The notes under the pieces: model-generated
Told to the model about the DNA's origin: nothing
The model's database searches: none
The model's input: the letters and a program-made list of their open reading frames with translations, nothing else
Translations under genes and position numbers: made by a program
In this document: piece after piece, positions 3-34,881 of the stretch
Numbering within the stretch: the first letter of the stretch is position 1
Layout: each line of letters opens with the position of its first letter
From: Macrostomum lignano
Lineage: Eukaryota
NCBI GenBank assembly: GCA_002269645.1
Contig: NIVC01000858.1
Span: forward strand, 186,001 to 250,000
Direction of reading: 5' to 3'
DNA: 64,000 bases

Positions 3-767
3 GTGTTGCGCCGTGTTAGCGCTTGGCAGCTGTTTGCCGCAATGTTTATCTCCAGCTGGGCGGTGAACTATATCCGGTTGTACCGGCTGGAGCTGGCTCA
101 GCGACAGCATGCGGTGACCAGTCTCCATTGTCGGCCCGCGGGACAAACTCTGAGCATCTTTGAGTCCATCAGCCTGTGGTTCACCGGCACAATGCGCGTC
201 GCTCCGCCCAAAAACGACTGCCTGAAGCAGTTAGAAGCGCTGGCAGTTGATCCCTTTTGGGATGTCAATCCGCTGGAGGCGGCAATCGACCTGCTAGGAA
301 ACATCGTATTGAACCGTCTGGTGCAGCTGATGCAGGCGGTAAATCTGGGCTACCGACAACTGATTGAGGGCCTGCCAATCTGGCACTCTGTCGGCATCGC
401 CTTCATCTTACTGTTCTTGCCCACGCTTTTCTTGCTGCTGCGCTCTGGCTACGTTCTCCGCCTTATGTACGGCCTCCTTCACGTGGGTCCGGACGCGAAC
501 CGCTTGCACGCGGAGCGCCTGGACACTTTGGAGAGGGAGAATCGGCGCCTCCTCGAACTTGTCCACGCGGCGCCGCAGCCGACACCTGCTCGGGCGCTGC
601 AGCGATCGGCGTCCATCGCCGTCAGCCAGCGGCAGCGTCCAGACGACCGGGGAGACGGCCCGGCAGCGGCGCCCGCAGTGTTGGCAAGGACGCCGCCGCT
701 GCGGATGCGCGCATCGCGGTCGGAGTGCAACATCTCGGTGGCCGCGTCGGTCGGTGACGATCAATGA
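3..767 (+). CDS. CLCC1: Chloride channel CLIC-like 1 / MCLC family membrane protein, 3' part (start lies upstream of the window)
   Basis: The translation WAVNYIRLYRLELAQRQ..C..SISLWF..DCLKQLEALAVDPFWDVNPLEA..LIEGLPIW+TM follows the MCLC pattern as I recall it (WNWxYLYK.AFA.HQ..C..W..D.C..Y.E.L.V.P.W.VPP..A..EIP..TM). Stop TGA at 765-767. Confidence 0.65.
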   Translation: MLRRVSAWQLFAAMFISSWAVNYIRLYRLELAQRQHAVTSLHCRPAGQTLSIFESISLWFTGTMRVAPPKNDCLKQLEALAVDPFWDVNPLEAAIDLLGNIVLNRLVQLMQAVNLGYRQLIEGLPIWHSVGIAFILLFLPTLFLLLRSGYVLRLMYGLLHVGPDANRLHAERLDTLERENRRLLELVHAAPQPTPARALQRSASIAVSQRQRPDDRGDGPAAAPAVLARTPPLRMRASRSECNISVAASVGDDQ

Positions 768-1347
768 CGGAGTTTCTCGGTGCCTTAGCCATTAGCTGTG
801 GGATGTTCCCATGCACTCTCCGCTGCTTTTCTGAAGCTCAAGAATGGCTCACCTAACAGATATTGGTTTTTGAAAATCTGGAATCTTGAAGCTTCAGCTT
901 AATTCCTCTATTCCTCTAAAGCTTGAGCTCAATTGTAGGCCAAGCAGTGATGCCCGATTGAGCCCTGAATTGGAGTTGTTTTTGAGTCTGTTCTGGTTCA
1001 TCCTGGCCTCGTTTTCGCACGCTCTTTAAGCGCCACTCTCATGAATCGCCCTCTGTGAAACCCGTGAATAATGATTACTCTATTTTCCTCTCGGCAGCAA
1101 ACTTGCTTCGAAATTCTATATATTTTATTATTGAGCTAAATACAGTTCACAGTTCGCTGCTGGCCTTATATTCCGAATTCGTATGTTTTTATCTTCCTGG
1201 CTATAATGTCCAATCACTTTTTGCCTTTCTGCTTTGAAAATCAAGTTAGTGACTGCAGTAAATTAGTTGCATTTTCTGGCTCTCACTCTAGCTGACAGGC
1301 CTTGCACTCAATGACTCTCGCAACCCGGCTTGTCCCGCTGCCGCCGC

Positions 1348-4300
1348 ATGGGCAAGCACAGAACTGACTCCCAGCAGCAGCAGGACGCTTCGCCTGACAG
1401 AGCCGCATCCAGTCGCAGCAGCAAGCGAAAGAAAGACAAGTCCAAAAAGAAGGAGAAGAAGTCCAAGAGCTCCAAGCGCGAGGGCCGGCGGGGCCGCAGC
1501 CCCTCCGAACGGAAGCGGCGCCACCGCCGTTCGTCCTCGAAGTCGGCATCCCCGGCGCCAGATTCGCTGAAGCGGCAGCAACGCAAGCGCGCCCGCAGCA
1601 GCAGCGACAGCCCCCTCGGCCAGCGTCACCGGGAAGGAAACTCGCGCGACCGGCCGCGGCCCGCCATGCCCAGCACCGGCCGCGGGAGCGGGCCCGATCG
1701 CCCAGCCTCGCCTCCCAGATCCCCCTGCCAGCTGGGCCGCCGCCCGCCCAGCAGCCGTCAACTGCTCAGGCGCCACCGCCGCCAACACCGCCACCGCCAC
1801 CGCCTCCCCCACCAGCGACATCGGCGTCCGTGACGGCAGCGGCGAGTCCCTTCGGTGCGCCTGCGCCTCAGCAATTTCAGCTGAATCCGTCGGCCGCTGA
1901 CTTTGTTCCGCAGCTTGCCGCCTTCAACAGCCCGCCGCCTCAGCAGGCCTTCCTGTCGCCACCTCCCGCCCGCTTCTGCGCTCCGGCTCTGTCAACGCCG
2001 ACCATTCTGTCGCCGCCGCTTGTCGCCATGAACTTTTCCGTGCCGCCGCCGCCGATGTCCATCGCTGGCAAGGAAGGCGACGGCGGCAGCCGCGGCGGCA
2101 ACAGCGCAGCGGTCGGGACCCCCGGCGACCGCAGCTCTGACGCGGAGCAGCCCGCTGACCTGCCAGACGAATTCTTGCAGCTCGGCGGCAACCTGCTGCT
2201 CAGCAAGCACTATCACGAGCCCGACTCCAGCATCTCCTATTTTCCCAACTTCCTGTCCAAGCCCGAGGCTGACAATCTGTTCCAGGTGCTGCTGAACGAG
2301 CTGGAGTGGCGCCAGAGAGACACCCTGGTGCGCGGCGAGTACCACAGGGAGCCCCGGCTCACCTGCTGGTTCGGCGTCCCCTACACCTACTCGGGTGTAG
2401 AGCTGCAGGCCAATCACGTGTGGCACCCCCTGCTCGCCGACATCAAGGACCGGCTGGTGCACAATCTGGATGCGAGCTTCAACTCTCTGCTGTGCAACCT
2501 GTACAGGTAACTGCTTCATCATCCTGTAACTCAGCGGGATCAGCATCTCGTGACCCAGGGGGATCAGCATCCCGTGATCCAGCGGGATCAGGATCCCGTG
2601 ATCCAGTGGGATCAGCATCCCGTGACCCAGTGGGATCAGGATCCCGTGACCCAGTTGGATCAGCATCCCGTGACCCAGTTGGATCAGCATCCCGTGACCC
2701 AGTGGGATCAGCATCCCGTGACCCAGTTGGATCAGCATCCCGTGACCCAGTTGGATCAGCATCCCGTGACCCAGTGGGATCAGCATCCCGTGACCCAGTG
2801 GGATCAGCATCCCGTGACCCAGTTGGATCAGCATCCCGTGACCCAGTGGGATCAGCATCCCGTGACCCAGTTGGATCAGCATCCCGTGACCCAGTTGGAT
2901 CAGCATCCCGTGACCCAGTGGGATCAGCATCCCGTGACCCAGTTGGATCAGCATCCCGTGACCCAGTTGGATCAGCATCCCGTGACCCAGTTGGATCAGC
3001 ATCCCGTGACCCAGTGGGATCAGCATCCCGTGACCCAGTTGGATCAGCATCCCGTGACCCAGTTGGATCAGCATCCCGTGACCCAGTTGGATCAGCATCC
3101 CGTGACCCAGTTGGATCAGCATCCCGTGACCCAGGGGGATGAGCATCCTGTGATCCAGTGGGATGAGCATCCCGTGACCCAGTGGGATCAGCATCCCGTG
3201 ACCCAGTGGGATCAGGATCCCGTGACCCAGTGGGATGAGCATCCCGTGACCCAGTGGGATGAGCATCCCGTGACCCAGTGGGATCAGCATCCCGTGACCC
3301 ACTTGGATCAGCATCCCGTGACCCAGTTGGATCAGCATCCCGTGACCCAGTGGGATCAGCATCCCGTGACCCAGTTGGATCAGCATCCCGTGACCCAGTG
3401 GGATCAGCATCCCGTGACCCAGTGGGATCAGGATCCCGTGACCCAGTTGGATCAGCATCCCGTGACCCAGTTGGATCAGCATCCCGTGACCCAGTTGGAT
3501 CAGCATCCCGTGACCCAGTTGGATCAGCATCCCGTGACCCAGTTGGATCAGCATCCCGTGACCCAGTTGGATCAGCATCCCGTGACCCAGTGGGATCAGC
3601 ATCCCGTGACCCAGTTGGATCAGCATCCCGTGACCCAGTTGGATCAGCATCCCGTGACCCAGTGGGATCAGCATCCCGTGACCCAGTTGGATCAGCATCC
3701 CGTGACCCAGTTGGATCAGCATCCCGTGACCCAGTTGGATCAGCATCCCGTGACCCAGTGGGATCAGCATCCCGTGACCCAGGGGGATGAGCATCCTGTG
3801 ATCCAGTGGGATGAGCATCCCGTGACCCAGTGGGATCAGCATCCCGTGACCCAGTGGGATCAGGATCCCGTGACCCAGTGGGATGAGCATCCCGTGACCC
3901 AGTGGGATGAGCATCCCGTGACCCAGTGGGATCAGCATCCCGTGACACAGTGGGATCAGGATCCCGTGACCCAGTGGGATCAGGATCCCGTGACCCAGTG
4001 GGATGAGCATCCCGTGACCCAGTGGGATGAGCATCCCGTGACCCAGTGGGATCAGCATCCCGTGACCCAGTTGGATCAGCATCCCGTGACCCAGTTGGAT
4101 CAGCATCCCGTGACCCAGTGGGATCAGCATCCCGTGACCCAGTTGGATCAGCATCCCGTGACCCAGTGGGATCAGCATCCCGTGACCCAGTGGGATCAGG
4201 ATCCCGTGACCCAGTTGGATCAGCATCCCGTGACCCAGTTGGATCAGCATCCCGTGACCCAGTTGGATCAGCATCCCGTGACCCAGTGGGATCAGCATCC

Positions 4301-5207
4301 CGTGACCCAGTTGGATCAGCATCCCGTGACCCAGTTGGATCAGCATCCCGTGACCCAGTGGGATCAGCATCCCGTGACCCAGTTGGATCAGCATCCCGTG
4401 ACCCAGTTGGATCAGCATCCCGTGACCCAGTGGGATCAGCATCCCGTGACCCAGTTGGATCAGCATCCCGTGACCCAGTTGGATCAGCATCCCGTGACCC
4501 AGTTGGATCAGCATCCCGTGACCCAGTGGGATCAGCATCCCGTGACCCAGGGGGATGAGCATCCTGTGATCCAGTGGGATGAGCATCCCGTGACCCAGTG
4601 GGATCAGCATCCCGTGACCCAGTGGGATCAGGATCCCGTGACCCAGTGGGATGAGCATCCCGTGACCCAGTGGGATGAGCATCCCGTGACCCAGTGGGAT
4701 CAGCATCCCGTGACACAGTGGGATCAGGATCCCGTGACCCAGTGGGATGAGCATCCCGTGACCCAGTGGGATCAGCATCCCGTGACACAGTGGGATCAGG
4801 ATCCCGTGACCCAGTGGGATGAGCATCCCGTGACCCAGTGGGATCAGCATCCCGTGACACAGTGGGATCAGCATCCCGAGCCCGCTCCCCACAGGTCGGG
4901 CAGAGACTCGATCGGCTGGCACGCGGACGATGAGAAGTCGCTAGGCCGGTACCCCCTGATCGCCTCCATCTCCCTGGGCTACGAGCGCCAGTTTGAGGTG
5001 AAAACGAAGCGAATTCAGCCGAAATTCCGCCAGCTGAACGAATGGGGCCGCCACCTGCGGCTGCCGCTGCGGCACGGCTCGCTGCTGGTGATGCGGGGTG
5101 CCATGCAGGTGCACTGGCTGCACTCGGTGCCCAAGGACCAGCTGGCCTTCAACAGCCCCACCGCCTCTCGCATCAACCTCACCTTCCGCTACACGCACCC
5201 GGACTGA
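1348..5207 (+). CDS. ALKBH3: AlkB-family 2OG-Fe(II) dioxygenase, ALKBH3-like, with a long Lys/Arg/Ser- and Pro-rich N-terminus. Exons 1348-2506 (1-nt frameshift near 1660) and 4895-5207
   Basis: EPRLTCWFG.PYTYSG, FNSLLCNLYR|SGRDSIGWHADDE (HxD), IASISLG.ER.F, LRHGSLLVMRGAMQVHWLHSVPK and RINLTFR are all present. Donor AG|GTAACT at 2506/2507 and acceptor CCCACAG|G at 4894/4895 join in phase 2 and restore NLYRSGRDSIGWH. Confidence 0.88.
2536..4878. repeat. 24-bp minisatellite (GGGATCAGCATCCCGTGACCCAGT and variants), about 97 copies, filling the ALKBH3 intron
   Basis: Direct reading. It produces the spurious 793-976 aa repeat ORFs in several frames. Confidence 0.97.
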
Positions 5208-5860: not shown

Positions 5861-7865
5861 GTGAGTCTGCCCGTGCTGTTGCACCTGACTGCTTGTGAGT
5901 CTGTCTGCCCGTGCTGTTGCACCTGACTGCTTGTGAGTCTGTCTGCCCGTGCTGTTGCACCTGACTGCTTGTGAGTCTGTCTGCCCGTGCTGTTGCACCT
6001 GACTGCTTGTGAGTCTGTCTGCCCGTGCTGTTGCACCTGACTGCTTGTGAGTCTGTCCGCCCGTGCTGTTGCACCTGACTGCTTGTGAGTCTGCCCGTGC
6101 TGTTGCACCTGACTGCTTGTGAGTCTGTCTGTGCTGTTGCACCTGACTGCTTGTGAGTCTGTCTGTACTGTTGCACCTGACTGCTTGTGAGTCTGCCCGT
6201 GCTGTTGCACCTGACTGCTTGTGAGTCTGTCTGCCCGTGCTGTTGCACCTGACTGCTTGTGAGTCTGTCTGCCCGTGCTGTTGCACCTGACTGCTTGTGA
6301 GTCTGCCTGTGCTGTTGCACCTGACTGCTTGTGAGTCTGCCCGTGCTGTTGCACCTGACTGCTTGTGAGTCTGTCTGTGCTGTTGCACCTGACTGCTTGT
6401 GAGTCTGTCTGTGCTGTTGCACCTGACTGCTTGTGAGTCTGTCTGTGCTGTTGCACCTGACTGCTTGTGAGTCTGTCCGCCCGTGCTGTTGCACCTGACT
6501 GCTTGTGAGTCTGCCCGTGCTGTTGCACCTGACTGCTTGTGAGTCTGTCTGTGCTGTTGCACCTGACTGCTTGTGAGTCTGTCTGTGCTGTTGCACCTGA
6601 CTGCTTGTGAGTCTGTCTGTGCTGTTGCACCTGACTGCTTGTGAGTCTGTCCGCCCGTGCTGTTGCACCTGACTGCTTGTGAGTCTGCCCGTGCTGTTGC
6701 ACCTGACTGCTTGTGAGTCTGTCTGTGCTGTTGCACCTGACTGCTTGTGAGTCTGCCTGTGCTGTTGCACCTGACTGCTTGTGAGTCTGCCCGTGCTGTT
6801 GCACCTGACTGCTTGTGAGTCTGTCTGTGCTGTTGCACCTGACTGCTTGTGAGTCTGTCTGTGCTGTTGCACCTGACTGCTTGTGAGTCTGTCTGTGCTG
6901 TTGCACCTGACTGCTTGTGAGTCTGCCCGTGGTGTTGCACCTGACTGCTTGTGAGTCTGTCTGTGCTGTTGCACCTGACTGCTTGTGAGTCTGCCCGTGC
7001 TGTTGCACCTGACTGCTTGTGAGTCTGTCTGCCCGTGCTGTTGCACCTGACTGCTTGTGAGTCTGTCTGTGCTGTTGCACCTGACTGCTTGTGAGTCTGC
7101 CCGTGCTGTTGCACCTGACTGCTTGTGAGTCTGCCCGTGCTGTTGCACCTGACTGCTTGTGAGTCTGTCTGCCCGTGCTGTTGCACCTGACTGCTTGTGA
7201 GTCTGTCTGCCCGTGCTGTTGCACCTGACTGCTTGTGAGTCTGTCTGTGCTGTTGCACCTGACTGCTTGTGAGTCTGCCCGTGCTGTTGCACCTGACTGC
7301 TTGTGAGTCTGCCCGTGCTGTTGCACCTGACTGCTTGTGAGTCTGTCTGCCCGTGCTGTTGCACCTGACTGCTTGTGAGTCTGTCTGTGCTGTTGCACCT
7401 GACTGCTTGTGAGTCTGTCTGTGCTGTTGCACCTGACTGCTTGTGAGTCTGTCTGTGCTGTTGCACCTGACTGCTTGTGAGTCTGCCCGTGCTGTTGCAC
7501 CTGACTGCTTGTGAGTCTGCCCGTGCTGTTGCACCTGACTGCTTGTGAGTCTGCCTGCCTGTGCTGTTGCACCTGACTGCTTGTGAGTCTGCCTGCCTGT
7601 GCTGTTGCACCTGACTGCTTGTGTCTGCCTGTGCTGTTGCACCTGACTGCTTGTGAGTCTGTCTGTGCTGTTGCACCTGACTGCTTGTGAGTCTGTCTGT
7701 GCTGTTGCACCTGACTGCTTGTGAGTCTGCCTGCCTGTGCTGTTGCACCTGACTGCTTGTGAGTCTGCCCGTGCTGTTGCACCTGACTGCTTGTGAGTCT
7801 GTCTGTGCTGTTGCACCTGACTGCTTGTGAGTCTGCCCGTGCTGTTGCACCTGACTGCTTGTGAG
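5861..7865. repeat. 34/38-bp minisatellite (core GTGCTGTTGCACCTGACTGCTTGTGAGTCT plus GTCT/GCCC spacers), about 55-58 copies
   Basis: Direct reading. Units differ by 4-nt blocks, and the 696-745 aa minus-strand ORFs are repeat artefacts. Confidence 0.95.
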
Positions 7866-12540: not shown

Positions 12541-12573
12541 GCCCGGCCAGGCTGGGAATTACGGGCGGGCGTG

Positions 12574-15500
12574 CTGTGCATGTCATAAACTGGGATGGGG
12601 CATACTGTGCATGTCATGAACTGGGATGGGGCATACTGTGCATGTCATGAACTGGGATGGGGCATACTGTGCATGTCATGAACTGGGATGGGGCATACTG
12701 TGCATGTCATGAACTGGGATGGGGCATACTGTGCATGTCATGAACTGGGATGGGGCATACTGTGCATGTCATGAACTGGGATGGGGCATACTGTGCATGT
12801 CATGAACTGGGATGGGGCATACTGTGCATGTCATGAACTGGGATGGGGCATACTGTGCATGTCATGAACTGGGATGGGGCATACTGTGCATGTCATGAAC
12901 TGGGATGGGGCATACTGTGCATGTCATGAACTGGGATGGGGCATACTGTGCATGTCATGAACTGGGATGGGGCATACTGTGCATGTCATGAACTGGGATG
13001 GGGCATACTGTGCATGTCATGAACTGGGATGGGGCATACTGTGCATGTCATGAACTGGGATGGGGCATACTGTGCATGTCATGAACTGGGATGGGGCATA
13101 CTGTGCATGTCATGAACTGGGATGGGGCATACTGTGCATGTCATGAACTGGGATGGGGCATACTGTGCATGTCATGAACTGGGATGGGGCATACTGTGCA
13201 TGTCATGAACTGGGATGGGGCATACTGTGCATGTCATGAACTGGGATGGGGCATACTGTGCATGTCATGAACTGGGATGGGGCATACTGTGCATGTCATG
13301 AACTGGGATGGGGCATACTGTGCATGTCATGAACTGGGATGGGGCATACTGTGCATGTCATGAACTGGGATGGGGCATACTGTGCATGTCATGAACTGGG
13401 ATGGGGCATACTGTGCATGTCATGAACTGGGATGGGGCATACTGTGCATGTCATGAACTGGGATGGGGCATACTGTGCATGTCATGAACTGGGATGGGGC
13501 ATACTGTGCATGTCATGAACTGGGATGGGGCATACTGTGCATGTCATGAACTGGGATGGGGCATACTGTGCATGTCATGAACTGGGATGGGGCATACTGT
13601 GCATGTCATGAACTGGGATGGGGCATACTGTGCATGTCATGAACTGGGATGGGGCATACTGTGCATGTCATGAACTGGGATGGGGCATACTGTGCATGTC
13701 ATGAACTGGGATGGGGCATACTGTGCATGTCATGAACTGGGATGGGGCATACTGTGCATGTCATGAACTGGGATGGGGCATACTGTGCATGTCATGAACT
13801 GGGATGGGGCATACTGTGCATGTCATGAACTGGGATGGGGCATACTGTGCATGTCATGAACTGGGATGGGGCATACTGTGCATGTCATGAACTGGGATGG
13901 GGCATACTGTGCATGTCATGAACTGGGATGGGGCATACTGTGCATGTCATGAACTGGGATGGGGCATACTGTGCATGTCATGAACTGGGATGGGGCATAC
14001 TGTGCATGTCATGAACTGGGATGGGGCATACTGTGCATGTCATGAACTGGGATGGGGCATACTGTGCATGTCATGAACTGGGATGGGGCATACTGTGCAT
14101 GTCATGAACTGGGATGGGGCATACTGTGCATGTCATGAACTGGGATGGGGCATACTGTGCATGTCATGAACTGGGATGGGGCATACTGTGCATGTCATGA
14201 ACTGGGATGGGGCATACTGTGCATGTCATGAACTGGGATGGGGCATACTGTGCATGTCATGAACTGGGATGGGGCATACTGTGCATGTCATGAACTGGGA
14301 TGGGGCATACTGTGCATGTCATGAACTGGGATGGGGCATACTGTGCATGTCATGAACTGGGATGGGGCATACTGTGCATGTCATGAACTGGGATGGGGCA
14401 TACTGTGCATGTCATGAACTGGGATGGGGCATACTGTGCATGTCATGAACTGGGATGGGGCATACTGTGCATGTCATGAACTGGGATGGGGCATACTGTG
14501 CATGTCATGAACTGGGATGGGGCATACTGTGCATGTCATGAACTGGGATGGGGCATACTGTGCATGTCATGAACTGGGATGGGGCATACTGTGCATGTCA
14601 TGAACTGGGATGGGGCATACTGTGCATGTCATGAACTGGGATGGGGCATACTGTGCATGTCATGAACTGGGATGGGGCATACTGTGCATGTCATGAACTG
14701 GGATGGGGCATACTGTGCATGTCATGAACTGGGATGGGGCATACTGTGCATGTCATGAACTGGGATGGGGCATACTGTGCATGTCATGAACTGGGATGGG
14801 GCATACTGTGCATGTCATGAACTGGGATGGGGCATACTGTGCATGTCATGAACTGGGATGGGGCATACTGTGCATGTCATGAACTGGGATGGGGCATACT
14901 GTGCATGTCATGAACTGGGATGGGGCATACTGTGCATGTCATGAACTGGGATGGGGCATACTGTGCATGTCATGAACTGGGATGGGGCATACTGTGCATG
15001 TCATGAACTGGGATGGGGCATACTGTGCATGTCATGAACTGGGATGGGGCATACTGTGCATGTCATGAACTGGGATGGGGCATACTGTGCATGTCATGAA
15101 CTGGGATGGGGCATACTGTGCATGTCATGAACTGGGATGGGGCATACTGTGCATGTCATGAACTGGGATGGGGCATACTGTGCATGTCATGAACTGGGAT
15201 GGGGCATACTGTGCATGTCATGAACTGGGATGGGGCATACTGTGCATGTCATGAACTGGGATGGGGCATACTGTGCATGTCATGAACTGGGATGGGGCAT
15301 ACTGTGCATGTCATGAACTGGGATGGGGCATACTGTGCATGTCATGAACTGGGATGGGGCATACTGTGCATGTCATGAACTGGGATGGGGCATACTGTGC
15401 ATGTCATGAACTGGGATGGGGCATACTGTGCATGTCATGAACTGGGATGGGGCATACTGTGCATGTCATGAACTGGGATGGGGCATACTGTGCATGTCAT

Positions 15501-18500
15501 GAACTGGGATGGGGCATACTGTGCATGTCATGAACTGGGATGGGGCATACTGTGCATGTCATGAACTGGGATGGGGCATACTGTGCATGTCATGAACTGG
15601 GATGGGGCATACTGTGCATGTCATGAACTGGGATGGGGCATACTGTGCATGTCATGAACTGGGATGGGGCATACTGTGCATGTCATGAACTGGGATGGGG
15701 CATACTGTGCATGTCATGAACTGGGATGGGGCATACTGTGCATGTCATGAACTGGGATGGGGCATACTGTGCATGTCATGAACTGGGATGGGGCATACTG
15801 TGCATGTCATGAACTGGGATGGGGCATACTGTGCATGTCATGAACTGGGATGGGGCATACTGTGCATGTCATGAACTGGGATGGGGCATACTGTGCATGT
15901 CATGAACTGGGATGGGGCATACTGTGCATGTCATGAACTGGGATGGGGCATACTGTGCATGTCATGAACTGGGATGGGGCATACTGTGCATGTCATGAAC
16001 TGGGATGGGGCATACTGTGCATGTCATGAACTGGGATGGGGCATACTGTGCATGTCATGAACTGGGATGGGGCATACTGTGCATGTCATGAACTGGGATG
16101 GGGCATACTGTGCATGTCATGAACTGGGATGGGGCATACTGTGCATGTCATGAACTGGGATGGGGCATACTGTGCATGTCATGAACTGGGATGGGGCATA
16201 CTGTGCATGTCATGAACTGGGATGGGGCATACTGTGCATGTCATGAACTGGGATGGGGCATACTGTGCATGTCATGAACTGGGATGGGGCATACTGTGCA
16301 TGTCATGAACTGGGATGGGGCATACTGTGCATGTCATGAACTGGGATGGGGCATACTGTGCATGTCATGAACTGGGATGGGGCATACTGTGCATGTCATG
16401 AACTGGGATGGGGCATACTGTGCATGTCATGAACTGGGATGGGGCATACTGTGCATGTCATGAACTGGGATGGGGCATACTGTGCATGTCATGAACTGGG
16501 ATGGGGCATACTGTGCATGTCATGAACTGGGATGGGGCATACTGTGCATGTCATGAACTGGGATGGGGCATACTGTGCATGTCATGAACTGGGATGGGGC
16601 ATACTGTGCATGTCATGAACTGGGATGGGGCATACTGTGCATGTCATGAACTGGGATGGGGCATACTGTGCATGTCATGAACTGGGATGGGGCATACTGT
16701 GCATGTCATGAACTGGGATGGGGCATACTGTGCATGTCATGAACTGGGATGGGGCATACTGTGCATGTCATGAACTGGGATGGGGCATACTGTGCATGTC
16801 ATGAACTGGGATGGGGCATACTGTGCATGTCATGAACTGGGATGGGGCATACTGTGCATGTCATGAACTGGGATGGGGCATACTGTGCATGTCATGAACT
16901 GGGATGGGGCATACTGTGCATGTCATGAACTGGGATGGGGCATACTGTGCATGTCATGAACTGGGATGGGGCATACTGTGCATGTCATGAACTGGGATGG
17001 GGCATACTGTGCATGTCATGAACTGGGATGGGGCATACTGTGCATGTCATGAACTGGGATGGGGCATACTGTGCATGTCATGAACTGGGATGGGGCATAC
17101 TGTGCATGTCATGAACTGGGATGGGGCATACTGTGCATGTCATGAACTGGGATGGGGCATACTGTGCATGTCATGAACTGGGATGGGGCATACTGTGCAT
17201 GTCATGAACTGGGATGGGGCATACTGTGCATGTCATGAACTGGGATGGGGCATACTGTGCATGTCATGAACTGGGATGGGGCATACTGTGCATGTCATGA
17301 ACTGGGATGGGGCATACTGTGCATGTCATGAACTGGGATGGGGCATACTGTGCATGTCATGAACTGGGATGGGGCATACTGTGCATGTCATGAACTGGGA
17401 TGGGGCATACTGTGCATGTCATGAACTGGGATGGGGCATACTGTGCATGTCATGAACTGGGATGGGGCATACTGTGCATGTCATGAACTGGGATGGGGCA
17501 TACTGTGCATGTCATGAACTGGGATGGGGCATACTGTGCATGTCATGAACTGGGATGGGGCATACTGTGCATGTCATGAACTGGGATGGGGCATACTGTG
17601 CATGTCATGAACTGGGATGGGGCATACTGTGCATGTCATGAACTGGGATGGGGCATACTGTGCATGTCATGAACTGGGATGGGGCATACTGTGCATGTCA
17701 TGAACTGGGATGGGGCATACTGTGCATGTCATGAACTGGGATGGGGCATACTGTGCATGTCATGAACTGGGATGGGGCATACTGTGCATGTCATGAACTG
17801 GGATGGGGCATACTGTGCATGTCATGAACTGGGATGGGGCATACTGTGCATGTCATGAACTGGGATGGGGCATACTGTGCATGTCATGAACTGGGATGGG
17901 GCATACTGTGCATGTCATGAACTGGGATGGGGCATACTGTGCATGTCATGAACTGGGATGGGGCATACTGTGCATGTCATGAACTGGGATGGGGCATACT
18001 GTGCATGTCATGAACTGGGATGGGGCATACTGTGCATGTCATGAACTGGGATGGGGCATACTGTGCATGTCATGAACTGGGATGGGGCATACTGTGCATG
18101 TCATGAACTGGGATGGGGCATACTGTGCATGTCATGAACTGGGATGGGGCATACTGTGCATGTCATGAACTGGGATGGGGCATACTGTGCATGTCATGAA
18201 CTGGGATGGGGCATACTGTGCATGTCATGAACTGGGATGGGGCATACTGTGCATGTCATGAACTGGGATGGGGCATACTGTGCATGTCATGAACTGGGAT
18301 GGGGCATACTGTGCATGTCATGAACTGGGATGGGGCATACTGTGCATGTCATGAACTGGGATGGGGCATACTGTGCATGTCATGAACTGGGATGGGGCAT
18401 ACTGTGCATGTCATGAACTGGGATGGGGCATACTGTGCATGTCATGAACTGGGATGGGGCATACTGTGCATGTCATGAACTGGGATGGGGCATACTGTGC

Positions 18501-21500
18501 ATGTCATGAACTGGGATGGGGCATACTGTGCATGTCATGAACTGGGATGGGGCATACTGTGCATGTCATGAACTGGGATGGGGCATACTGTGCATGTCAT
18601 GAACTGGGATGGGGCATACTGTGCATGTCATGAACTGGGATGGGGCATACTGTGCATGTCATGAACTGGGATGGGGCATACTGTGCATGTCATGAACTGG
18701 GATGGGGCATACTGTGCATGTCATGAACTGGGATGGGGCATACTGTGCATGTCATGAACTGGGATGGGGCATACTGTGCATGTCATGAACTGGGATGGGG
18801 CATACTGTGCATGTCATGAACTGGGATGGGGCATACTGTGCATGTCATGAACTGGGATGGGGCATACTGTGCATGTCATGAACTGGGATGGGGCATACTG
18901 TGCATGTCATGAACTGGGATGGGGCATACTGTGCATGTCATGAACTGGGATGGGGCATACTGTGCATGTCATGAACTGGGATGGGGCATACTGTGCATGT
19001 CATGAACTGGGATGGGGCATACTGTGCATGTCATGAACTGGGATGGGGCATACTGTGCATGTCATGAACTGGGATGGGGCATACTGTGCATGTCATGAAC
19101 TGGGATGGGGCATACTGTGCATGTCATGAACTGGGATGGGGCATACTGTGCATGTCATGAACTGGGATGGGGCATACTGTGCATGTCATGAACTGGGATG
19201 GGGCATACTGTGCATGTCATGAACTGGGATGGGGCATACTGTGCATGTCATGAACTGGGATGGGGCATACTGTGCATGTCATGAACTGGGATGGGGCATA
19301 CTGTGCATGTCATGAACTGGGATGGGGCATACTGTGCATGTCATGAACTGGGATGGGGCATACTGTGCATGTCATGAACTGGGATGGGGCATACTGTGCA
19401 TGTCATGAACTGGGATGGGGCATACTGTGCATGTCATGAACTGGGATGGGGCATACTGTGCATGTCATGAACTGGGATGGGGCATACTGTGCATGTCATG
19501 AACTGGGATGGGGCATACTGTGCATGTCATGAACTGGGATGGGGCATACTGTGCATGTCATGAACTGGGATGGGGCATACTGTGCATGTCATGAACTGGG
19601 ATGGGGCATACTGTGCATGTCATGAACTGGGATGGGGCATACTGTGCATGTCATGAACTGGGATGGGGCATACTGTGCATGTCATGAACTGGGATGGGGC
19701 ATACTGTGCATGTCATGAACTGGGATGGGGCATACTGTGCATGTCATGAACTGGGATGGGGCATACTGTGCATGTCATGAACTGGGATGGGGCATACTGT
19801 GCATGTCATGAACTGGGATGGGGCATACTGTGCATGTCATGAACTGGGATGGGGCATACTGTGCATGTCATGAACTGGGATGGGGCATACTGTGCATGTC
19901 ATGAACTGGGATGGGGCATACTGTGCATGTCATGAACTGGGATGGGGCATACTGTGCATGTCATGAACTGGGATGGGGCATACTGTGCATGTCATGAACT
20001 GGGATGGGGCATACTGTGCATGTCATGAACTGGGATGGGGCATACTGTGCATGTCATGAACTGGGATGGGGCATACTGTGCATGTCATGAACTGGGATGG
20101 GGCATACTGTGCATGTCATGAACTGGGATGGGGCATACTGTGCATGTCATGAACTGGGATGGGGCATACTGTGCATGTCATGAACTGGGATGGGGCATAC
20201 TGTGCATGTCATGAACTGGGATGGGGCATACTGTGCATGTCATGAACTGGGATGGGGCATACTGTGCATGTCATGAACTGGGATGGGGCATACTGTGCAT
20301 GTCATGAACTGGGATGGGGCATACTGTGCATGTCATGAACTGGGATGGGGCATACTGTGCATGTCATGAACTGGGATGGGGCATACTGTGCATGTCATGA
20401 ACTGGGATGGGGCATACTGTGCATGTCATGAACTGGGATGGGGCATACTGTGCATGTCATGAACTGGGATGGGGCATACTGTGCATGTCATGAACTGGGA
20501 TGGGGCATACTGTGCATGTCATGAACTGGGATGGGGCATACTGTGCATGTCATGAACTGGGATGGGGCATACTGTGCATGTCATGAACTGGGATGGGGCA
20601 TACTGTGCATGTCATGAACTGGGATGGGGCATACTGTGCATGTCATGAACTGGGATGGGGCATACTGTGCATGTCATGAACTGGGATGGGGCATACTGTG
20701 CATGTCATGAACTGGGATGGGGCATACTGTGCATGTCATGAACTGGGATGGGGCATACTGTGCATGTCATGAACTGGGATGGGGCATACTGTGCATGTCA
20801 TGAACTGGGATGGGGCATACTGTGCATGTCATGAACTGGGATGGGGCATACTGTGCATGTCATGAACTGGGATGGGGCATACTGTGCATGTCATGAACTG
20901 GGATGGGGCATACTGTGCATGTCATGAACTGGGATGGGGCATACTGTGCATGTCATGAACTGGGATGGGGCATACTGTGCATGTCATGAACTGGGATGGG
21001 GCATACTGTGCATGTCATGAACTGGGATGGGGCATACTGTGCATGTCATGAACTGGGATGGGGCATACTGTGCATGTCATGAACTGGGATGGGGCATACT
21101 GTGCATGTCATGAACTGGGATGGGGCATACTGTGCATGTCATGAACTGGGATGGGGCATACTGTGCATGTCATGAACTGGGATGGGGCATACTGTGCATG
21201 TCATGAACTGGGATGGGGCATACTGTGCATGTCATGAACTGGGATGGGGCATACTGTGCATGTCATGAACTGGGATGGGGCATACTGTGCATGTCATGAA
21301 CTGGGATGGGGCATACTGTGCATGTCATGAACTGGGATGGGGCATACTGTGCATGTCATGAACTGGGATGGGGCATACTGTGCATGTCATGAACTGGGAT
21401 GGGGCATACTGTGCATGTCATGAACTGGGATGGGGCATACTGTGCATGTCATGAACTGGGATGGGGCATACTGTGCATGTCATGAACTGGGATGGGGCAT

Positions 21501-22564
21501 ACTGTGCATGTCATGAACTGGGATGGGGCATACTGTGCATGTCATGAACTGGGATGGGGCATACTGTGCATGTCATGAACTGGGATGGGGCATACTGTGC
21601 ATGTCATGAACTGGGATGGGGCATACTGTGCATGTCATGAACTGGGATGGGGCATACTGTGCATGTCATGAACTGGGATGGGGCATACTGTGCATGTCAT
21701 GAACTGGGATGGGGCATACTGTGCATGTCATGAACTGGGATGGGGCATACTGTGCATGTCATGAACTGGGATGGGGCATACTGTGCATGTCATGAACTGG
21801 GATGGGGCATACTGTGCATGTCATGAACTGGGATGGGGCATACTGTGCATGTCATGAACTGGGATGGGGCATACTGTGCATGTCATGAACTGGGATGGGG
21901 CATACTGTGCATGTCATGAACTGGGATGGGGCATACTGTGCATGTCATGAACTGGGATGGGGCATACTGTGCATGTCATGAACTGGGATGGGGCATACTG
22001 TGCATGTCATGAACTGGGATGGGGCATACTGTGCATGTCATGAACTGGGATGGGGCATACTGTGCATGTCATGAACTGGGATGGGGCATACTGTGCATGT
22101 CATGAACTGGGATGGGGCATACTGTGCATGTCATGAACTGGGATGGGGCATACTGTGCATGTCATGAACTGGGATGGGGCATACTGTGCATGTCATGAAC
22201 TGGGATGGGGCATACTGTGCATGTCATGAACTGGGATGGGGCATACTGTGCATGTCATGAACTGGGATGGGGCATACTGTGCATGTCATGAACTGGGATG
22301 GGGCATACTGTGCATGTCATGAACTGGGATGGGGCATACTGTGCATGTCATGAACTGGGATGGGGCATACTGTGCATGTCATGAACTGGGATGGGGCATA
22401 CTGTGCATGTCATGAACTGGGATGGGGCATACTGTGCATGTCATGAACTGGGATGGGGCATACTGTGCATGTCATGAACTGGGATGGGGCATACTGTGCA
22501 TGTCATGAACTGGGATGGGGCATACTGTGCATGTCATGAACTGGGATGGGGCATACTGTGCATG
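12574..22564. repeat. 31-bp satellite GAACTGGGATGGGGCATACTGTGCATGTCAT, about 322 apparently identical copies (10 kb)
   Basis: Direct reading. I saw no variant units except at the two ends. Confidence 0.98.
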
Positions 22565-24580: not shown

Positions 24581-27500
24581 GTTTTGTTGCTGAAAAAAAT
24601 CAATTTACTGCACGATTGGGTTCTGCAAGCATTGACCTCTCCTCAATGTTGCCACCTAACCTAAATTATGGCAGCCAATTGTGTGTCCGTATGATAGAAA
24701 TCTGTGACCATAAAAGCCACTTAATAATCCTTCAAATACATCAAGTCTAAAATTTCGATGCAACCCATCAGTCAGCTTCTAGTTGTTTCAGACCAAACTG
24801 ACGATCTCTGGTCGACATCGTCCAGCTTCCGCATGACTTATTAAAGGATTCAAAGCAGATCTGCAGCCAAAACCTGCTGCAATCGAGAACTTCCTTCCCG
24901 GCTGCTTCTTTATCCCACGAGAGCCAAAGACGGGGGCCTGAATGGGGTATAGAGTCGCCAACTTTGGCCGGAGCCTTACTGTAGGTTGTGGGCTACACTC
25001 CAGTGCTGTAGTGGATTTCCAAGGCCGAGTGCTCTTCGCTCATACATGCGCAACACCTGGCCGGCTGGCGAGAGACCCAGCCGACGTAAGTCACAAAAAT
25101 GCCTACCGGAAAGACGCAGAACTAATTAGGTGACAAGGTATTTAGCCTTAATAATAGTTATAATTACTTGCCATATACCCAAAATTACATTGATTATGCT
25201 CAAGCTTCTTCCATATGTAAGTCGCAACTCGCAAGTCACACAGCCGGTGTAAATCTGGGTGGTTGCGCATGTATGCTCTTCATGAAAGAATAGTAAAAAA
25301 CACCTGAGCAGATTTTTTTTGAATTAACAATGGAATGCAAAAAACGTGACAATGGAGCAACCAAGCTTTGTATATTTTATTCAAATGCAGAATGAACTCA
25401 TTGTAAAAATGCGTTATCTAAAAAGAATGCAATAAAAAAGCAATGAGTATGAGAAAAAGCTCGTCATGAAGTCTGGAAAACACAGGCGACCCGAACAATA
25501 AGCAGATTAGCAGGCAGCAAGCCGGTTACCAGCAGACCGAGAATCAATCAGCCTCGCCACTTCTGAAATAAAATGGGGATAATTTTTTGTGAGTAACTTG
25601 CATTGATAACCGCTATAGCAAATACAAAAGAGTAGATTTTGACTTTAATAATCAGCAGTTTTGGTATTTATTGAATTGTCTTCAGCGAGATTGCAGAAGC
25701 AGAACTGGAAACATCATTTTAGATATTTAAAATAAGCTGAGCATTGCTCTCTGTCAGCCAAATGACTAAAGGACAGCTCATTTGTATGCAAACTGGAGAT
25801 GGCCCTAGCGTTTTGGCATGAACAATATTGCACAGATACGACACCAAGGATAGCATAAGATAAGCCACCCCAGCTCTAAACTGTGCTGGAAAGCAAAACA
25901 AAATGTCAGTTACCTCAATTGCATGATGTAGTGGCTGAGAACAGCTCTTGACACCTGGAAATACAGAAAAGGAAAGAGATGACACTAGTGATGATGGAAA
26001 AACATTACAAAAATGCAATCTAAGAGTAATTGAGTCAGCAATTTAATTTTTAATTGTCTTCAGAAATGTACAGAAGCAGAACTGGAGACATCATGCATAT
26101 TAAATAAATAAATAAAAGTTATAAATTTTATCAACTTATGAATATGAGCTATTTAATGAATTATATTTGTTTGTCAAACCATTAAAGAATAAAGTGGCAT
26201 AACAAAATGATGCCAATTATATACATATAAGGAAGACAACTGCTTATATAGCACAGTTACGACACCAAATATGTAATTAATAGTTACAGCTTGGTTGAAA
26301 TGCTGTGCCAAAAAGTCTACCAAAAAGTCAATTGTTCTAGAGAACAATATGATCTAAATAGTAGCAAAAAATGAACTAATTAAGCATCTAAATGGAGCTA
26401 TTAATGCCAAAATAAATTTATTGGTTTATGAAAAAAACTTTTGGAATGCCTTTTATGAGGGCTTATTATATGACTAGGACTAGTTGGTGATAACTGTTAC
26501 CAAGCAAATAACCATTAATCCATTATTGGTAACAAAGCAAATTTATGAAGTTCTATTAATATGAAGCCTCTATCTATATATCTTATCTGTATAGTAGGCC
26601 TTAATGTTCCACCCACACTCCAGATCATGTAGTATATGCCCAAAAATTTAGGCATACATTGGCCTTGCATGCCAAAATTAGGCATGCACAATTGGTGTGC
26701 ATCACTCTTAAGAAAATAGTATGTGTGCATACCTGGCATGCACTTTATAGAATCACGAATAAAAGTTATCGTGAAGTTGAAAAAAGATGAAGAAAGTTCA
26801 TTTATAGGCACAAATTTCAAGCTTTCCAGTTTTTTAAGCTTGTAAAAAAGCATTTAAACAAATCTTTGCATATATAAATTTTCTGCTGTAAAAAGTATTG
26901 CCAAAAAGCATAAAAAGCAACCAAATTATCTGGTAAAAAGAGTCTATTACACAATTTAAAAATGGTATTTTATTGTCACAACATAAAAAATATCATTTAT
27001 TATTGTAACACCAACGTATTTTTGAAAATGGGTGTGCATTACATTTTTTCAATGTACAATTGTAATTATTCAATTTTTGTTCAGGCGTGCATCCAGCATG
27101 ATCTAGACTATGTTGTTCCACCATAGCTATAACTATGGCTATGGGATCCTATGTGTATGGCAAATATGATAAAATAGGTGCCTATGGCAATTATAAATAT
27201 GCTTATAATACTAATAAATAGCTACTTTTTTGACTATGACTATGGAAATATGGTAGTTGCTATTATATTCTATAGATTTCCATGGCTATAGCCATAGTTA
27301 TTAATTTAAAAATTATAAATATTAGTAACAGGTAGAGAAAAACAAAGATACCTTGGTAAACTATATTATAGACTTAAAAACTTATGAATTATACCTAATA
27401 AATTCTGGTAGAATAGCACGCTTGATAATGAGAAGTAAAAGAAAGGAGATTGCGAGCATTTTCATTAGAACGACATGTTTCACCTAACTTTAGGCATCAT

Positions 27501-27633
27501 TGGGCAGATTGGAATTTATTTAATTTAAGTCAAAACATAGAGTATAAATACATTTCAGTGGCAGATAGTCAGTGATGCACAAAATTGTAATAACAAAACA
27601 CGGGGGGAGTCAACAGATCAAACTGAGACAGAT

Positions 27634-27685
<52 letters not shown>
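27634..27685. repeat. (GA)n microsatellite
   Basis: Direct reading. Confidence 0.95.
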
Positions 27686-27703
27686 CCAGGTAGTGGGTGT
27701 ACG

Positions 27704-28760
27704 TTAAAACACTCTCAGGAGAGCACTGGCCCCAGAATAACCCAACTGTTTATTTAAAGTTGGTTGCCAGTTTTTAATGTACATAGCTTCAATAATCTTA
27801 CGGCGATGATCGATATTGCAACTATGTATGATAGTAAACCTATCTTTTTGTTCACTGTTGGCGCATTTACTACAGGCCATAAGATGGTCTTGCACTGCTG
27901 ATGGCTTTAACCAGTGTTCTCTGCCCCTAACATACAAGTGCTGTTTCGATTTACCTAGGTAGGTAACTCTCTGATCAACAGAGCACTGGAATTGGTAAAT
28001 GACACCTGCACATAGTTGCAAAGGCACACGGCTTTTAAGCTTAGAGACATACTGGCCAACTTTATCGCAATAAAAGGTGATTCTCAGATTATCATTAGAA
28101 AACTGCTTAAAGCACCGGAGGAGCGCTTTCTTAAAACTGATCAAAGCCTCGCCATAGTAAGGGATAGAAAGGTGCCTATATTTGGTCTAAGACTGATCTT
28201 GCTGTTGTTCATTCACATTGGATTTTTGCAATTGTGATTTTTGGTTGAGAAACTTTTTAAGATAGTAGCTAAGCAGAGATTCTGGGTAATCATTCATATG
28301 GAAATATTTCAAAAGCCCGGTGGAGCATGCAGCGAACCAGGCTGATTTTCCACTGCTTTGGGCAGATCAAATTAAAGTTAAGCAAAAAGCCAGTGAAGGT
28401 TGGTTTTCTATAAACTTTGGTCGAAAGCTGCTGACCTTCAATGTTAATGTCAATGTCAAGGAACGGTATGGTTTTTTTGCCTCCCTCAACAGTGATTTTG
28501 ATATTAGAATGCATATTATTTAACAAATCAAAGAACTTGGTGTGGTCTGCTTTTTTGTCAAAGATCAAAAGCGTGTCATTGACATATCTCTAATAGAATT
28601 TAGGAGTGCAGTCGCTTCTTAGCCATTCTTTCTCCCAATTGGAAAGGCAAATGTTGGCAAGCGTTGGGGCAAAGGGGCTTTCCATGGCGCATCCGTTGAT
28701 TTGGCAGTAATACTTTTCTTGAAAAAGGAAAATTCCACTAGTGGCCATGACCATGAGTTT
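27704..28760 (-). mobile_element. Decayed Penelope-like retroelement (RT C-terminal half plus GIY-YIG endonuclease)
   Basis: AMESPFAPTLANI (GxxMGSP-type motif), Y*RYVNDTLLIF (YxDD changed to YVND, with a stop), FLDI..LSTKVYRKPTFTG, and GVIYQFQC..TYLGKSKQHLYVRGREH..IEAMYIK..PTLNKQ. Confidence 0.9.
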
Positions 28761-30724: not shown

Positions 30725-30885
30725 AGCATCCCAAGACAGCAAGCATCCCCCTCCCCCCCCCCCCCCAGATAGCAAGCACCCCCAGATAGCAAGCACCCCC
30801 AGATAGCAAGCATCCCTCAGATTGCAAGCACCCCAGATAGAAAGAACCCCCAGATAGCAAGCATCCAATTGATTGCAAGTATCTA
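30725..30885. repeat. Short ~17-bp repeat (CCCCCAGATAGCAAGCA) with a poly-C run
   Basis: Direct reading. Confidence 0.8.
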
Positions 30886-34850: not shown

Positions 34851-34881
34851 TTTTTAATGTGTTTTAATAAAAAAATCTTTT

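What the first reader, a model, noticed from the sequence alone, without database searches (positions are those of the whole stretch)
1348..2250. ALKBH3-like demethylase with an RS/basic region, polyproline and a PAM2 (PABP-binding) motif
About 290 aa precede the AlkB domain. They include a K/R/S-rich tract (SKRKKDKSKKKEKK..RGRSPSERKRRHRRSSSKS..RERARSPS), a P-rich linker, and LNPSAADFVP at 1881-1910, which fits the PAM2 consensus LNxxAxEFxP. PAM2 motifs bind the MLLE domain of cytoplasmic poly(A)-binding protein, and ALKBH3 removes m1A/m3C from single-stranded DNA and RNA (established). I do not know this architecture from vertebrate ALKBH2/3. Inference: an AlkB enzyme tethered to polyadenylated mRNPs and/or speckles, i.e. 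a dedicated mRNA demethylase or repair enzyme.
Basis: partly seen in the sequence, partly recalled or inferred. Interest (0 to 1): 0.75.

Follow-up and report, generated by a model that had tools for sequence, protein, structure and literature searches.

The report
Flatworm ALKBH3 with a PABP-docking motif
This is the Macrostomum lignano (flatworm) version of the RNA/DNA demethylase ALKBH3, with a long disordered head that carries a likely docking peptide (PAM2) for poly(A)-binding protein; the same pairing turns up in spiders and sea stars, so it is probably functional, although in this genomic copy one missing G breaks the reading frame.

Summary
The window is Macrostomum lignano DNA (contig NIVC01000858.1). 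It has a two-exon ALKBH3-type gene: exon 1 at 1348-2506, an intron at 2507-4894 filled by a 24-bp minisatellite, and exon 2 at 4895-5207.

LNPSAADFVP lies at 1881-1910 inside a predicted disordered N-terminal region of about 290 aa. That region also holds a K/R/S-rich basic tract (net charge +28) and a polyproline run.

In this copy the start-codon frame and the PAM2/AlkB frame join only if one G is added to the G-run at 1684-1686. Two other loci in the same assembly have that G and are annotated as 489-490 aa proteins. The repaired window CDS is identical to one of them.

The motif fits the ELM PAM2 pattern and scores just under Pfam's cutoff. PAM2-like motifs also occur in ALKBH3 homologues of five spiders (C-terminal tail) and two sea stars (N-terminal linker). 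They are absent from 141 vertebrate sequences and 12 mollusc, annelid and nemertean sequences.

A profile built from these eight motifs hits only four PDB chains, all PAM2 peptides. MLLE binding, localisation to speckles and activity are untested, and no other flatworm orthologue was found. I found no paper describing this architecture.

The parts
1348..1686 (+). Exon 1, first part. Start codon and the K/R/S-rich N-terminus (residues 1-113), read in the ATG frame.
   Evidence: GC at third codon positions is 0.83 against 0.58 and 0.63 at the other two positions. The sequence is collinear with P0383 and P0382.
1684..1686 (+). Frameshift site. The G-run is GGG here and GGGG in the two sister loci. 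It is the only difference from locus L002 across exon 1.
   Evidence: three-locus DNA alignment; adding one G gives a protein identical to P0383.
1687..2506 (+). Exon 1, second part. Holds the polyproline run, the PAM2-like motif, a linker and the N-terminal half of the AlkB domain. The splice donor is AG|GTAA at 2506/2507.
1420..1545 (+). Strongly basic K/R/S tract (SKRKKDKSKKKEKK...ERKRRHRRSSSKS). It is probably a nuclear-localisation or nucleic-acid-binding region. It includes a degenerate form of the KRRRxRxQG motif found at the N-terminus of other ALKBH3 orthologues.
   Evidence: residues 1-125: S 22%, R 20%, K 13%, net charge +28, 7 RS/SR dipeptides. (alignment with the conserved N-terminal motif).
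1773..1814 (+). Polyproline run PPPPTPPPPPPPPP. It is two prolines shorter in locus L003 because of an in-frame 6-bp deletion.
1875..1913 (+). PAM2-like short linear motif FQLNPSAADFVPQ, with the core LNPSAADFVP at 1881-1910.
   Evidence: Match to the ELM pattern. Pfam PAM2 at 18.4-18.9 bits. Predicted disordered, pLDDT about 34-37. Identical in all three M. lignano loci. A profile of eight ALKBH3-linked motifs hits only four PDB chains, all PAM2 peptides.
2028..2030 (+). Internal ATG (MNFSV...). The NCBI annotation of this copy uses it as the start (BOX15_Mlig032459g2, 263 aa), which leaves out the PAM2 motif.
2229..2506 (+). AlkB (2OG-FeII_Oxy_2) domain, N-terminal half.
   Evidence: Pfam E=4e-34. 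Alignment to ALKBH3 structure 2IUW. AlphaFold pLDDT above 90.
2507..4894 (+). Intron, from GTAA to CACAG. It is almost entirely a 24-bp minisatellite (2516-4878, 98.5 copies).
   Evidence: The same array has 65.4 and 22.5 copies in the sister loci.
4895..5207 (+). Exon 2: the C-terminal half of the AlkB domain, with the stop TGA at 5205-5207. The Fe(II) ligands are H and D in WHAD (4920-4928) and H in HWLHSVP (5121-5123). The 2OG arginines are in RINLTFR (5169-5189).
   Evidence: H394, D396, H461, R477 and R483 are invariant or nearly invariant among 150 homologues.

Best explanation
The gene is the Macrostomum lignano orthologue of ALKBH3, an Fe(II)/2-oxoglutarate dioxygenase that removes 1-methyladenine and 3-methylcytosine from single-stranded DNA and RNA.

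Its catalytic core is intact. In front of it sits a lineage-specific, disordered extension of about 290 aa with three parts:
- a very basic K/R/S tract, probably for nuclear import or non-specific nucleic-acid binding;
- a polyproline run;
- a PAM2-type short linear motif, LNPSAADFVP.

The most likely role of the motif is to dock onto the MLLE domain of cytoplasmic poly(A)-binding protein. That would concentrate the demethylase on polyadenylated mRNPs, where it could repair alkylated mRNA or erase m1A.

Shown here: the gene model, the ALKBH3 assignment, the disorder prediction, the match to the motif, and its recurrence in other phyla.
Inferred: MLLE binding and action on mRNA.

In this window one G is missing from a G-run, so the start codon and the PAM2/AlkB frame are uncoupled. 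Because the exon is otherwise identical to an intact sister locus, I think an uncorrected long-read homopolymer error is more likely than a real mutation, but a very recent mutation in one duplicate cannot be excluded.
For: - Organism and gene model.
- ALKBH3 assignment: Pfam 2OG-FeII_Oxy_2 at E=4e-34; 174.6 bits to ALKBH3 structures against 90.8 for ALKBH2; the catalytic H-x-D...H and R...R residues are conserved.
- The N-terminus is coding: third-position GC is 0.83 in the ATG frame. Two sister loci are annotated as 489-490 aa from the same ATG, by a transcript-based pipeline (PMC5730564). The indel between paralogues is in frame and 6 bp long.
- Motif quality: it matches the ELM pattern. 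It is the only such match in six frames of 64 kb, and the strict consensus appears in 0.004% of shuffles. PAM2 is the only Pfam hit for the peptide. It lies in a region with pLDDT below 50.
- Recurrence: five spider ALKBH3 homologues carry LN[AV][ND]A[PI][DE]F[IV]P in an otherwise divergent C-terminal tail, where L, N, A, F and P are among the few invariant columns.
- Recurrence: the sea stars Patiria and Acanthaster carry GLNPYAPEF and GLNPNAPVFEP in the same N-terminal linker as the flatworm.
- Controls: 0 of 141 vertebrate ALKBH3 sequences match.
- Specificity: a profile of the eight ALKBH3-linked motifs, searched against 177,635 PDB sequences, returns only superPAM2, Paip2, GSPT1/eRF3 and Paip1 peptides.
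Against: - The Pfam score is below the curated cutoff: 18.4-18.9 against 20.
- No other flatworm orthologue was found, so conservation within flatworms is untested.
- Molluscs, annelids, a nemertean, amphioxus, a sea urchin, a sea cucumber and the sea star Asterias lack the motif. It is therefore not ancestral or general.
- The three M. lignano copies are too similar (98-100%) to show selection on the motif.
- P/A-rich disordered regions produce such motifs by chance at about 0.4-1.7% per protein.
- In this copy the motif is not in frame with any upstream ATG.
- I obtained no binding, localisation or activity data, and no RNA reads.
Confidence: 0.55

Rival explanations
1. The PAM2 match is a chance product of a P/A-rich disordered region and has no binding function. 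On this view the N-terminal extension only supplies nuclear import or non-specific nucleic-acid affinity to an ordinary ALKBH3.
For: - The ELM pattern appears in 0.4-1.7% of shuffles.
- The Pfam score is below the gathering threshold.
- Other spiralian ALKBH3 orthologues lack the motif.
- No flatworm orthologue is available to test conservation.
Against: - The strict consensus appears in only 0.004% of shuffles.
- Two further lineages have the same motif on the same enzyme. In five spiders the invariant columns of the tail include exactly the PAM2 contact residues, and the motif keeps its position in two sea stars.
- The profile of these motifs finds only PAM2 peptides in the PDB.
Confidence: 0.25
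2. The missing G is real. This locus would then be a recently disabled duplicate. It would make at most a 161-aa basic peptide from ATG 1348, or an AlkB-only 263-aa protein from ATG 2028 as NCBI annotates it. In that case the PAM2 motif is not expressed from this copy.
For: - GGG here against GGGG in two sister loci.
- The assembly was polished with Illumina and RNA-seq reads using Pilon (PMC5730564), which should remove many homopolymer errors.
- The genome has large, recent duplications in which one copy can decay.
Against: - Exon 1 is otherwise 100% identical to the intact locus L002 over 1159 bp.
- The assembly is built from long PacBio reads. It is my own inference, not shown here, that such reads tend to drop bases in homopolymer runs and that short-read polishing is unreliable between duplicates of 95% identity or more, because reads then map ambiguously.
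Confidence: 0.35
3. The motif is a real MLLE ligand, but its partner is the MLLE domain of the HECT ubiquitin ligase UBR5/HYD rather than PABPC. It would then control turnover of the enzyme rather than target it to mRNA.
For: One of the PDB entries retrieved by the motif profile is listed under the Paip1 PAM2 peptide as 3NTW. From my own knowledge, this entry is the UBR5 MLLE-Paip1 complex, and PAM2 peptides can bind both kinds of MLLE domain.
Against: Most characterised PAM2 proteins act through PABPC (established knowledge). ALKBH3 is a single-strand and RNA enzyme, for which tethering to PABP has an obvious use. Nothing here distinguishes the two partners.
Confidence: 0.1

Closest known systems
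Human and vertebrate ALKBH3 (PDB 2IUW, 8JNR, 9NCZ)
   Same: It has the same catalytic domain, about 45-50% identical over 197 aa at E=3.7e-50. The Fe(II) and 2OG ligands are the same, and it is clearly closer to ALKBH3 than to ALKBH2. A degenerate remnant of the N-terminal KRRRxRxQG motif is present.
   Different: Vertebrate proteins are about 275-300 aa with a linker of about 35 aa and no PAM2: 0 of 141 match. The flatworm protein is 490 aa, with an extension of about 290 aa that holds a basic tract, polyproline and PAM2.
ALKBH3-like proteins of spiders (Nephila pilipes GFS91089.1, Argiope bruennichi XP_055953982.1, Parasteatoda tepidariorum XP_042907467.1, Stegodyphus mimosarum KFM66967.1, Caerostris extrusa GIX81195.1)
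   Same: An ALKBH3-type core is combined with a PAM2 motif that closely matches the consensus, in a disordered extension. The motif is a conserved island in a divergent region.
   Different: The motif sits in a C-terminal tail of about 300 aa, roughly 190 aa after the catalytic domain, and is followed by a conserved helix-like segment of unknown nature. These proteins keep the canonical N-terminal KRKNARTQGRF motif. The origin is therefore independent, or the motif has been repositioned.
ALKBH3-like proteins of valvatid sea stars (Patiria miniata XP_038049091.1, Acanthaster planci XP_022110375.1)
   Same: The PAM2-like motif (GLNPYAPEFKS, GLNPNAPVFEPK) lies in the same expanded linker as in the flatworm, between the N-terminal basic motif and the first conserved beta strand.
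   Different: The extension is shorter (about 165 aa) and rich in RG/RGG rather than K/R/S. The Patiria motif lacks the final proline. Asterias, a sea urchin and a sea cucumber lack the motif.
Classical PAM2 proteins (Paip1, Paip2, ataxin-2, eRF3/GSPT1 and others)
   Same: The motif has the Leu, Asn, Ala, Phe and Pro positions shared with Paip2, eRF3/GSPT1 and Paip1 peptides held in the PDB. A profile of the ALKBH3-linked motifs retrieves only these peptides.
   Different: Those proteins regulate translation, deadenylation or mRNA decay. None is a nucleic-acid repair or demethylation enzyme.
ALKBH2 with its N-terminal PCNA-interacting (APIM) motif
   Same: The design principle is the same: an AlkB-family core is directed to its substrate by a short linear motif in a disordered N-terminus. 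This comparison rests on established knowledge and was not tested here.
   Different: The motif and partner differ (PCNA at replication forks), the substrate is double-stranded DNA, and the paralogue is different (90.8 bits).

Membership tests
AlkB-family Fe(II)/2OG dioxygenase, ALKBH3 subfamily | 2OG-FeII_Oxy_2 (PF13532) domain above the curated threshold | tested here: met
   119 bits against a cutoff of 31.2, E=4e-34, covering profile positions 2-194 of 194.
AlkB-family Fe(II)/2OG dioxygenase, ALKBH3 subfamily | Fe(II) triad H-x-D...H and the 2OG-binding arginines | tested here: met
   H394, D396, H461, R477 and R483 (P0001 numbering) align with human ALKBH3. They are invariant or at least 90% conserved in 150 homologues.
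AlkB-family Fe(II)/2OG dioxygenase, ALKBH3 subfamily | Closer to ALKBH3 than to the paralogue ALKBH2 | tested here: met
   174.6 bits to ALKBH3 chains against 90.8 to ALKBH2 chains. The best named database hits are all annotated ALKBH3.
AlkB-family Fe(II)/2OG dioxygenase, ALKBH3 subfamily | Conserved N-terminal KRRRxRxQG(G/S)W motif of metazoan ALKBH3 | tested here: inconclusive
   MAFFT places ERKRRHRRSSS under this motif, but the QGxW part is missing.
AlkB-family Fe(II)/2OG dioxygenase, ALKBH3 subfamily | Oxidative demethylation of m1A and m3C in single-stranded DNA or RNA | not testable with these tools
   This needs an enzyme assay.
PAM2 motif (ELM LIG_PAM2_1 / Pfam PF07145) | Match to the ELM regular expression | tested here: met
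   FQLNPSAADFVPQ matches. It is the only match in six frames of the window.
PAM2 motif (ELM LIG_PAM2_1 / Pfam PF07145) | Pfam PAM2 score at or above the gathering threshold of 20 bits | tested here: not met
   18.4 and 18.9 bits on the isolated peptide. No hit is reported on the full-length protein. It is just below threshold, and PAM2 is the only family hit.
PAM2 motif (ELM LIG_PAM2_1 / Pfam PF07145) | Location in an accessible, intrinsically disordered region | tested here: met
   AlphaFold2 pLDDT is 34-43 for residues 161-210, with no secondary structure predicted.
PAM2 motif (ELM LIG_PAM2_1 / Pfam PF07145) | Evolutionary conservation of the motif relative to its flanks | tested here: inconclusive
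   - The motif is identical in three M. lignano loci, but these are 98-100% identical overall.
- No other flatworm orthologue was found.
- Conservation as an island is shown in spiders and sea stars, which are separate lineages.
PAM2 motif (ELM LIG_PAM2_1 / Pfam PF07145) | Direct binding to an MLLE domain | not testable with these tools
This needs ITC, a pull-down or complex modelling.
RS (arginine/serine) domain of SR and SR-like proteins | Dense, consecutive RS/SR dipeptide repeats | tested here: not met
   There are 7 RS/SR dipeptides in residues 1-125. The tract is lysine-rich (K 13%, R 20%, S 22%) and looks like a nuclear-localisation signal.

The most novel reading that the evidence does not exclude
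Tethering ALKBH3 to poly(A)-binding protein through PAM2 is a real targeting mechanism that has evolved repeatedly: in macrostomid flatworms, spiders and valvatid sea stars. It would define an mRNA dealkylation-repair or m1A-erasing activity coupled to poly(A) mRNPs, which vertebrates lack or achieve by other means.
Probability: 0.4. Interest if true: 0.75.

Novelty: new variant of a known kind. Interest (0 to 1): 0.55.

Why it matters
ALKBH3 is known to act on RNA, removing m1A and m3C from mRNA and tRNA. How it finds RNA substrates in cells is poorly understood.

A PAM2 motif fused to ALKBH3 would give a simple, testable mechanism: recruitment through the PABP MLLE domain to polyadenylated mRNPs. 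Its appearance at different positions in three distant animal lineages argues that selection favours this coupling.

M. lignano is transgenic- and RNAi-tractable (PMC5730564), so the hypothesis could be tested in vivo. I found no paper linking PAM2 or MLLE to an AlkB enzyme.

Practical point: the NCBI model for this locus (263 aa) is truncated by a single-base indel and hides this architecture.

Tried and rejected
1. Flatworm orthologues. Three searches found only M. lignano copies.
   - The word-indexed search with PAM2 plus AlkB was partly swamped by polyproline words.
   - The exhaustive HMMER search of 1.84 billion representatives was run with the full protein.
   - A search without the polyproline, covering the linker and half the domain, gave 4 hits and no flatworm.
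   - Conservation within flatworms therefore could not be tested.
2. A small intron instead of a frameshift. Rejected: the sister loci are collinear and differ only by one G.
3. An RS domain and speckle targeting. Rejected as a label because there are too few RS dipeptides.
4. A single-peptide phmmer search against the PDB gave nothing. A profile of eight motifs was needed.
5. Pfam on the full-length proteins does not report PAM2 for M. lignano. It appears only on isolated peptides, which is usual for an 18-position model.
6. Selection analysis between paralogues. Upstream of Met 2028 there are only 3 substitutions (1 non-synonymous, 2 synonymous) and one in-frame indel. That is too few.
7. 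Literature. Searches for PAM2 with AlkB or ALKBH, ALKBH3 with MLLE, and M. lignano with AlkB returned nothing relevant.
8. Modelling the MLLE-peptide complex.
Full report
**What is in the sequence**

The window is genomic DNA of the flatworm Macrostomum lignano, assembly Mlig_3_7, contig NIVC01000858.1. Between 1348 and 5207 on the + strand lies a two-exon gene.

- Exon 1 runs from ATG 1348 to 2506, with the donor AG|GTAA.
- The intron, 2507-4894, is almost entirely a 24-bp minisatellite of 98.5 copies.
- Exon 2, 4895-5207, follows a CACAG acceptor and ends in TGA.

**The frameshift**

- In this copy the ATG frame ends at a stop at 1831-1833.
- The frame carrying the PAM2 motif and the AlkB domain is open from 1398 but has no ATG before 2028.
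- The NCBI annotation of this locus (BOX15_Mlig032459g2, 263 aa) therefore starts at 2028 and leaves the motif out.
- The same assembly has two more loci: L002 (BOX15_Mlig032459g1, 490 aa) and L003 (BOX15_Mlig016133g1, 489 aa, partial).
- Across exon 1 the window differs from L002 by a single base. The G-run at 1684-1686 is GGG here and GGGG in both sister loci.
- Adding that G gives a 490-aa protein identical to P0383.
- The assembly is PacBio/Canu polished with Pilon, and it contains 180 Mb of duplicated blocks at 95% identity or more (PMC5730564).
- I consider an uncorrected homopolymer error more likely, at about 0.6. A very recent disabling mutation in one duplicate is not excluded.

**Is the N-terminal region coding?**

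- Third-position GC is 0.83 in the ATG frame over 1348-1685, against 0.58 and 0.63 at the other positions. This resembles the AlkB exons (0.85-0.89) and differs from the flanking non-coding DNA, which is flat at about 0.44.
- The signal is weaker in the proline-rich stretch, where CCN codons dominate.
- The annotation of the sister loci is transcript-based (StringTie/TACO, trans-splice and poly(A) boundaries, TransDecoder) and begins at the same ATG.
- L003 differs from the other two loci by an in-frame 6-bp deletion in the polyproline run. Upstream of Met 2028 it has 2 synonymous and 1 non-synonymous changes.
- Together these make an mRNA that starts downstream of the motif unlikely. I did not see reads directly.

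**The enzyme**

- Pfam 2OG-FeII_Oxy_2 matches at E=4e-34.
- The domain scores 174.6 bits to human ALKBH3 structures (2IUW and others) against 90.8 to ALKBH2.
- The H-x-D...H iron ligands and the R...R 2OG ligands are present and conserved among 150 homologues.
- AlphaFold2 models residues 290-488 at pLDDT above 90.
- Residues 1-290 are mostly below 50, including the motif at about 34-37.

**The motif**

- FQLNPSAADFVPQ satisfies the ELM LIG_PAM2_1 pattern and is the only such match in all six frames of the window.
- In composition-preserving shuffles the ELM pattern arises in 0.4-1.7% of trials. The strict form LNxxAx[ED]FxP arises in 0.004%.
- Pfam PAM2 is the only family that the isolated peptide hits, at 18.4-18.9 bits, just under the 20-bit cutoff.

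**Evidence from elsewhere**

- The exhaustive HMMER search found no protein sharing the N-terminal region. Scanning its 150 best hits did show PAM2 motifs in other ALKBH3 homologues.
- Five spiders (Nephila, Argiope, Parasteatoda, Stegodyphus and Caerostris) carry LN[AV][ND]A[PI][DE]F[IV]P in a C-terminal tail of about 300 aa that is otherwise poorly conserved.
- In that tail L, N, A, F and P are among the few invariant columns.
- The sea stars Patiria miniata and Acanthaster planci carry GLNPYAPEFKS and GLNPNAPVFEPK in the N-terminal linker. This is the same segment, between the basic KRRR motif and the first conserved strand, that holds the flatworm motif.
- The motif is absent from 141 vertebrate sequences.
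- It is also absent from the molluscs, annelids, nemertean, amphioxus, sea urchin, sea cucumber and Asterias that I examined.
- A profile made only from the eight ALKBH3-linked motifs, searched against all 177,635 distinct PDB sequences at E up to 10, returned four chains.
- All four are PAM2 peptides: superPAM2 (8SMO), Paip2 (1JGN), GSPT1/eRF3 (2RQH) and Paip1 (1JH4, 3NTW).

**Interpretation**

The best reading is an ALKBH3 orthologue whose disordered N-terminus carries a real MLLE-docking peptide. This would recruit the enzyme to PABP-bound mRNPs.

The recurrence in three phyla at two different positions looks like convergent gain of a short linear motif, which argues for function. I put about 0.55 on the whole statement. 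The gene and enzyme assignment alone is above 0.9.

The rivals are:
- a chance motif (0.25);
- UBR5 rather than PABPC as the partner (0.1);
- for this locus specifically, a real frameshift that removes the motif from the product (0.35, not exclusive of the others).

The speckle idea is weak. The basic tract has 7 RS/SR dipeptides in 125 aa, is lysine-rich, and looks more like a nuclear-localisation or nucleic-acid-binding tract.

**Novelty**

I found no paper connecting PAM2 or MLLE with an AlkB enzyme in the searchable library. The spider and sea-star proteins are annotated only as ALKBH3-like or uncharacterised.

This is a new variant of a known kind: a known enzyme family combined with a known motif class in a pairing I did not find described. 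It rests on sequence evidence only.

Noticed in passing
window 2516-4878; L002 4170-5738; L003 4169-4709: The single intron of the gene is a 24-bp minisatellite (TCAGCATCCCGTGACCCAGTGGGA). Its copy number differs greatly between the three near-identical loci: 98.5, 65.4 and 22.5 copies. The flanking exons are 98-100% identical.
   Followed up: partly
window 12567-22564: A 10-kb, nearly perfect 31-bp minisatellite (322.5 copies, 99% matches) with strong GC skew (+0.37). Many other arrays fill the window, for example 5861-7865 (34 bp), 31006-34840 (23 bp), 47581-48862 (20 bp) and 59935-61627 (46 bp).
   Followed up: no
window 3-767 (+): An open frame with coding-like third-position GC (0.74) and a sub-threshold Pfam match to MCLC, the Mid-1-related chloride channel family (22.3 bits against a cutoff of 25). 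It looks like the 3' end of a gene. No called gene covers it in the NCBI-derived locus L001, where nothing is listed between 611 and 4001.
   Followed up: partly
window 1311-1367 (+): A short upstream ORF (MTLATRLVPLPPHGQAQN, 18 codons) starts 37 nt before the main ATG at 1348 and overlaps it in another frame. It could affect translation if the 5' UTR includes it.
   Followed up: no
window 63577-63999: A 21-bp tandem repeat, AGCCCTAACCCTAGCCCTAGT (20 copies), that contains the telomere-like unit CCCTAA and runs to the end of the window.
   Followed up: no
window 26001-42000: An AT-rich block (GC 0.30-0.38) that contrasts with about 0.5-0.6 elsewhere in the window.
   Followed up: no
spider proteins P0166, P0202, P0208, P0230 and P0280, about 60-110 aa after the PAM2 motif (alignment A3, columns about 620-665): A second conserved segment follows the PAM2 motif in the spider ALKBH3 tails (consensus RDxxELDTYxxL...NQxxILxRICSMIxNA). 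It has no Pfam match and its nature is unknown.
   Followed up: no
P0001 residues 226-230 (window 2028-2042): AlphaFold2 predicts a short strand at MNFSV with pLDDT about 77. It lies at the same place in the linker as the conserved FxF/YExP strand of other ALKBH3 proteins. The NCBI start codon for this copy therefore falls exactly at the first conserved structural element.
   Followed up: partly
P0129 (1150 aa) and P0144 (795 aa, Asterias amurensis): Other ALKBH3 homologues have large and different extensions. P0129 has about 930 aa in front of the AlkB domain. The Asterias protein has RGG-rich N-terminal repeats and an acidic repeat tail at the C-terminus. Extensions of ALKBH3 seem evolutionarily labile in invertebrates.
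   Followed up: no
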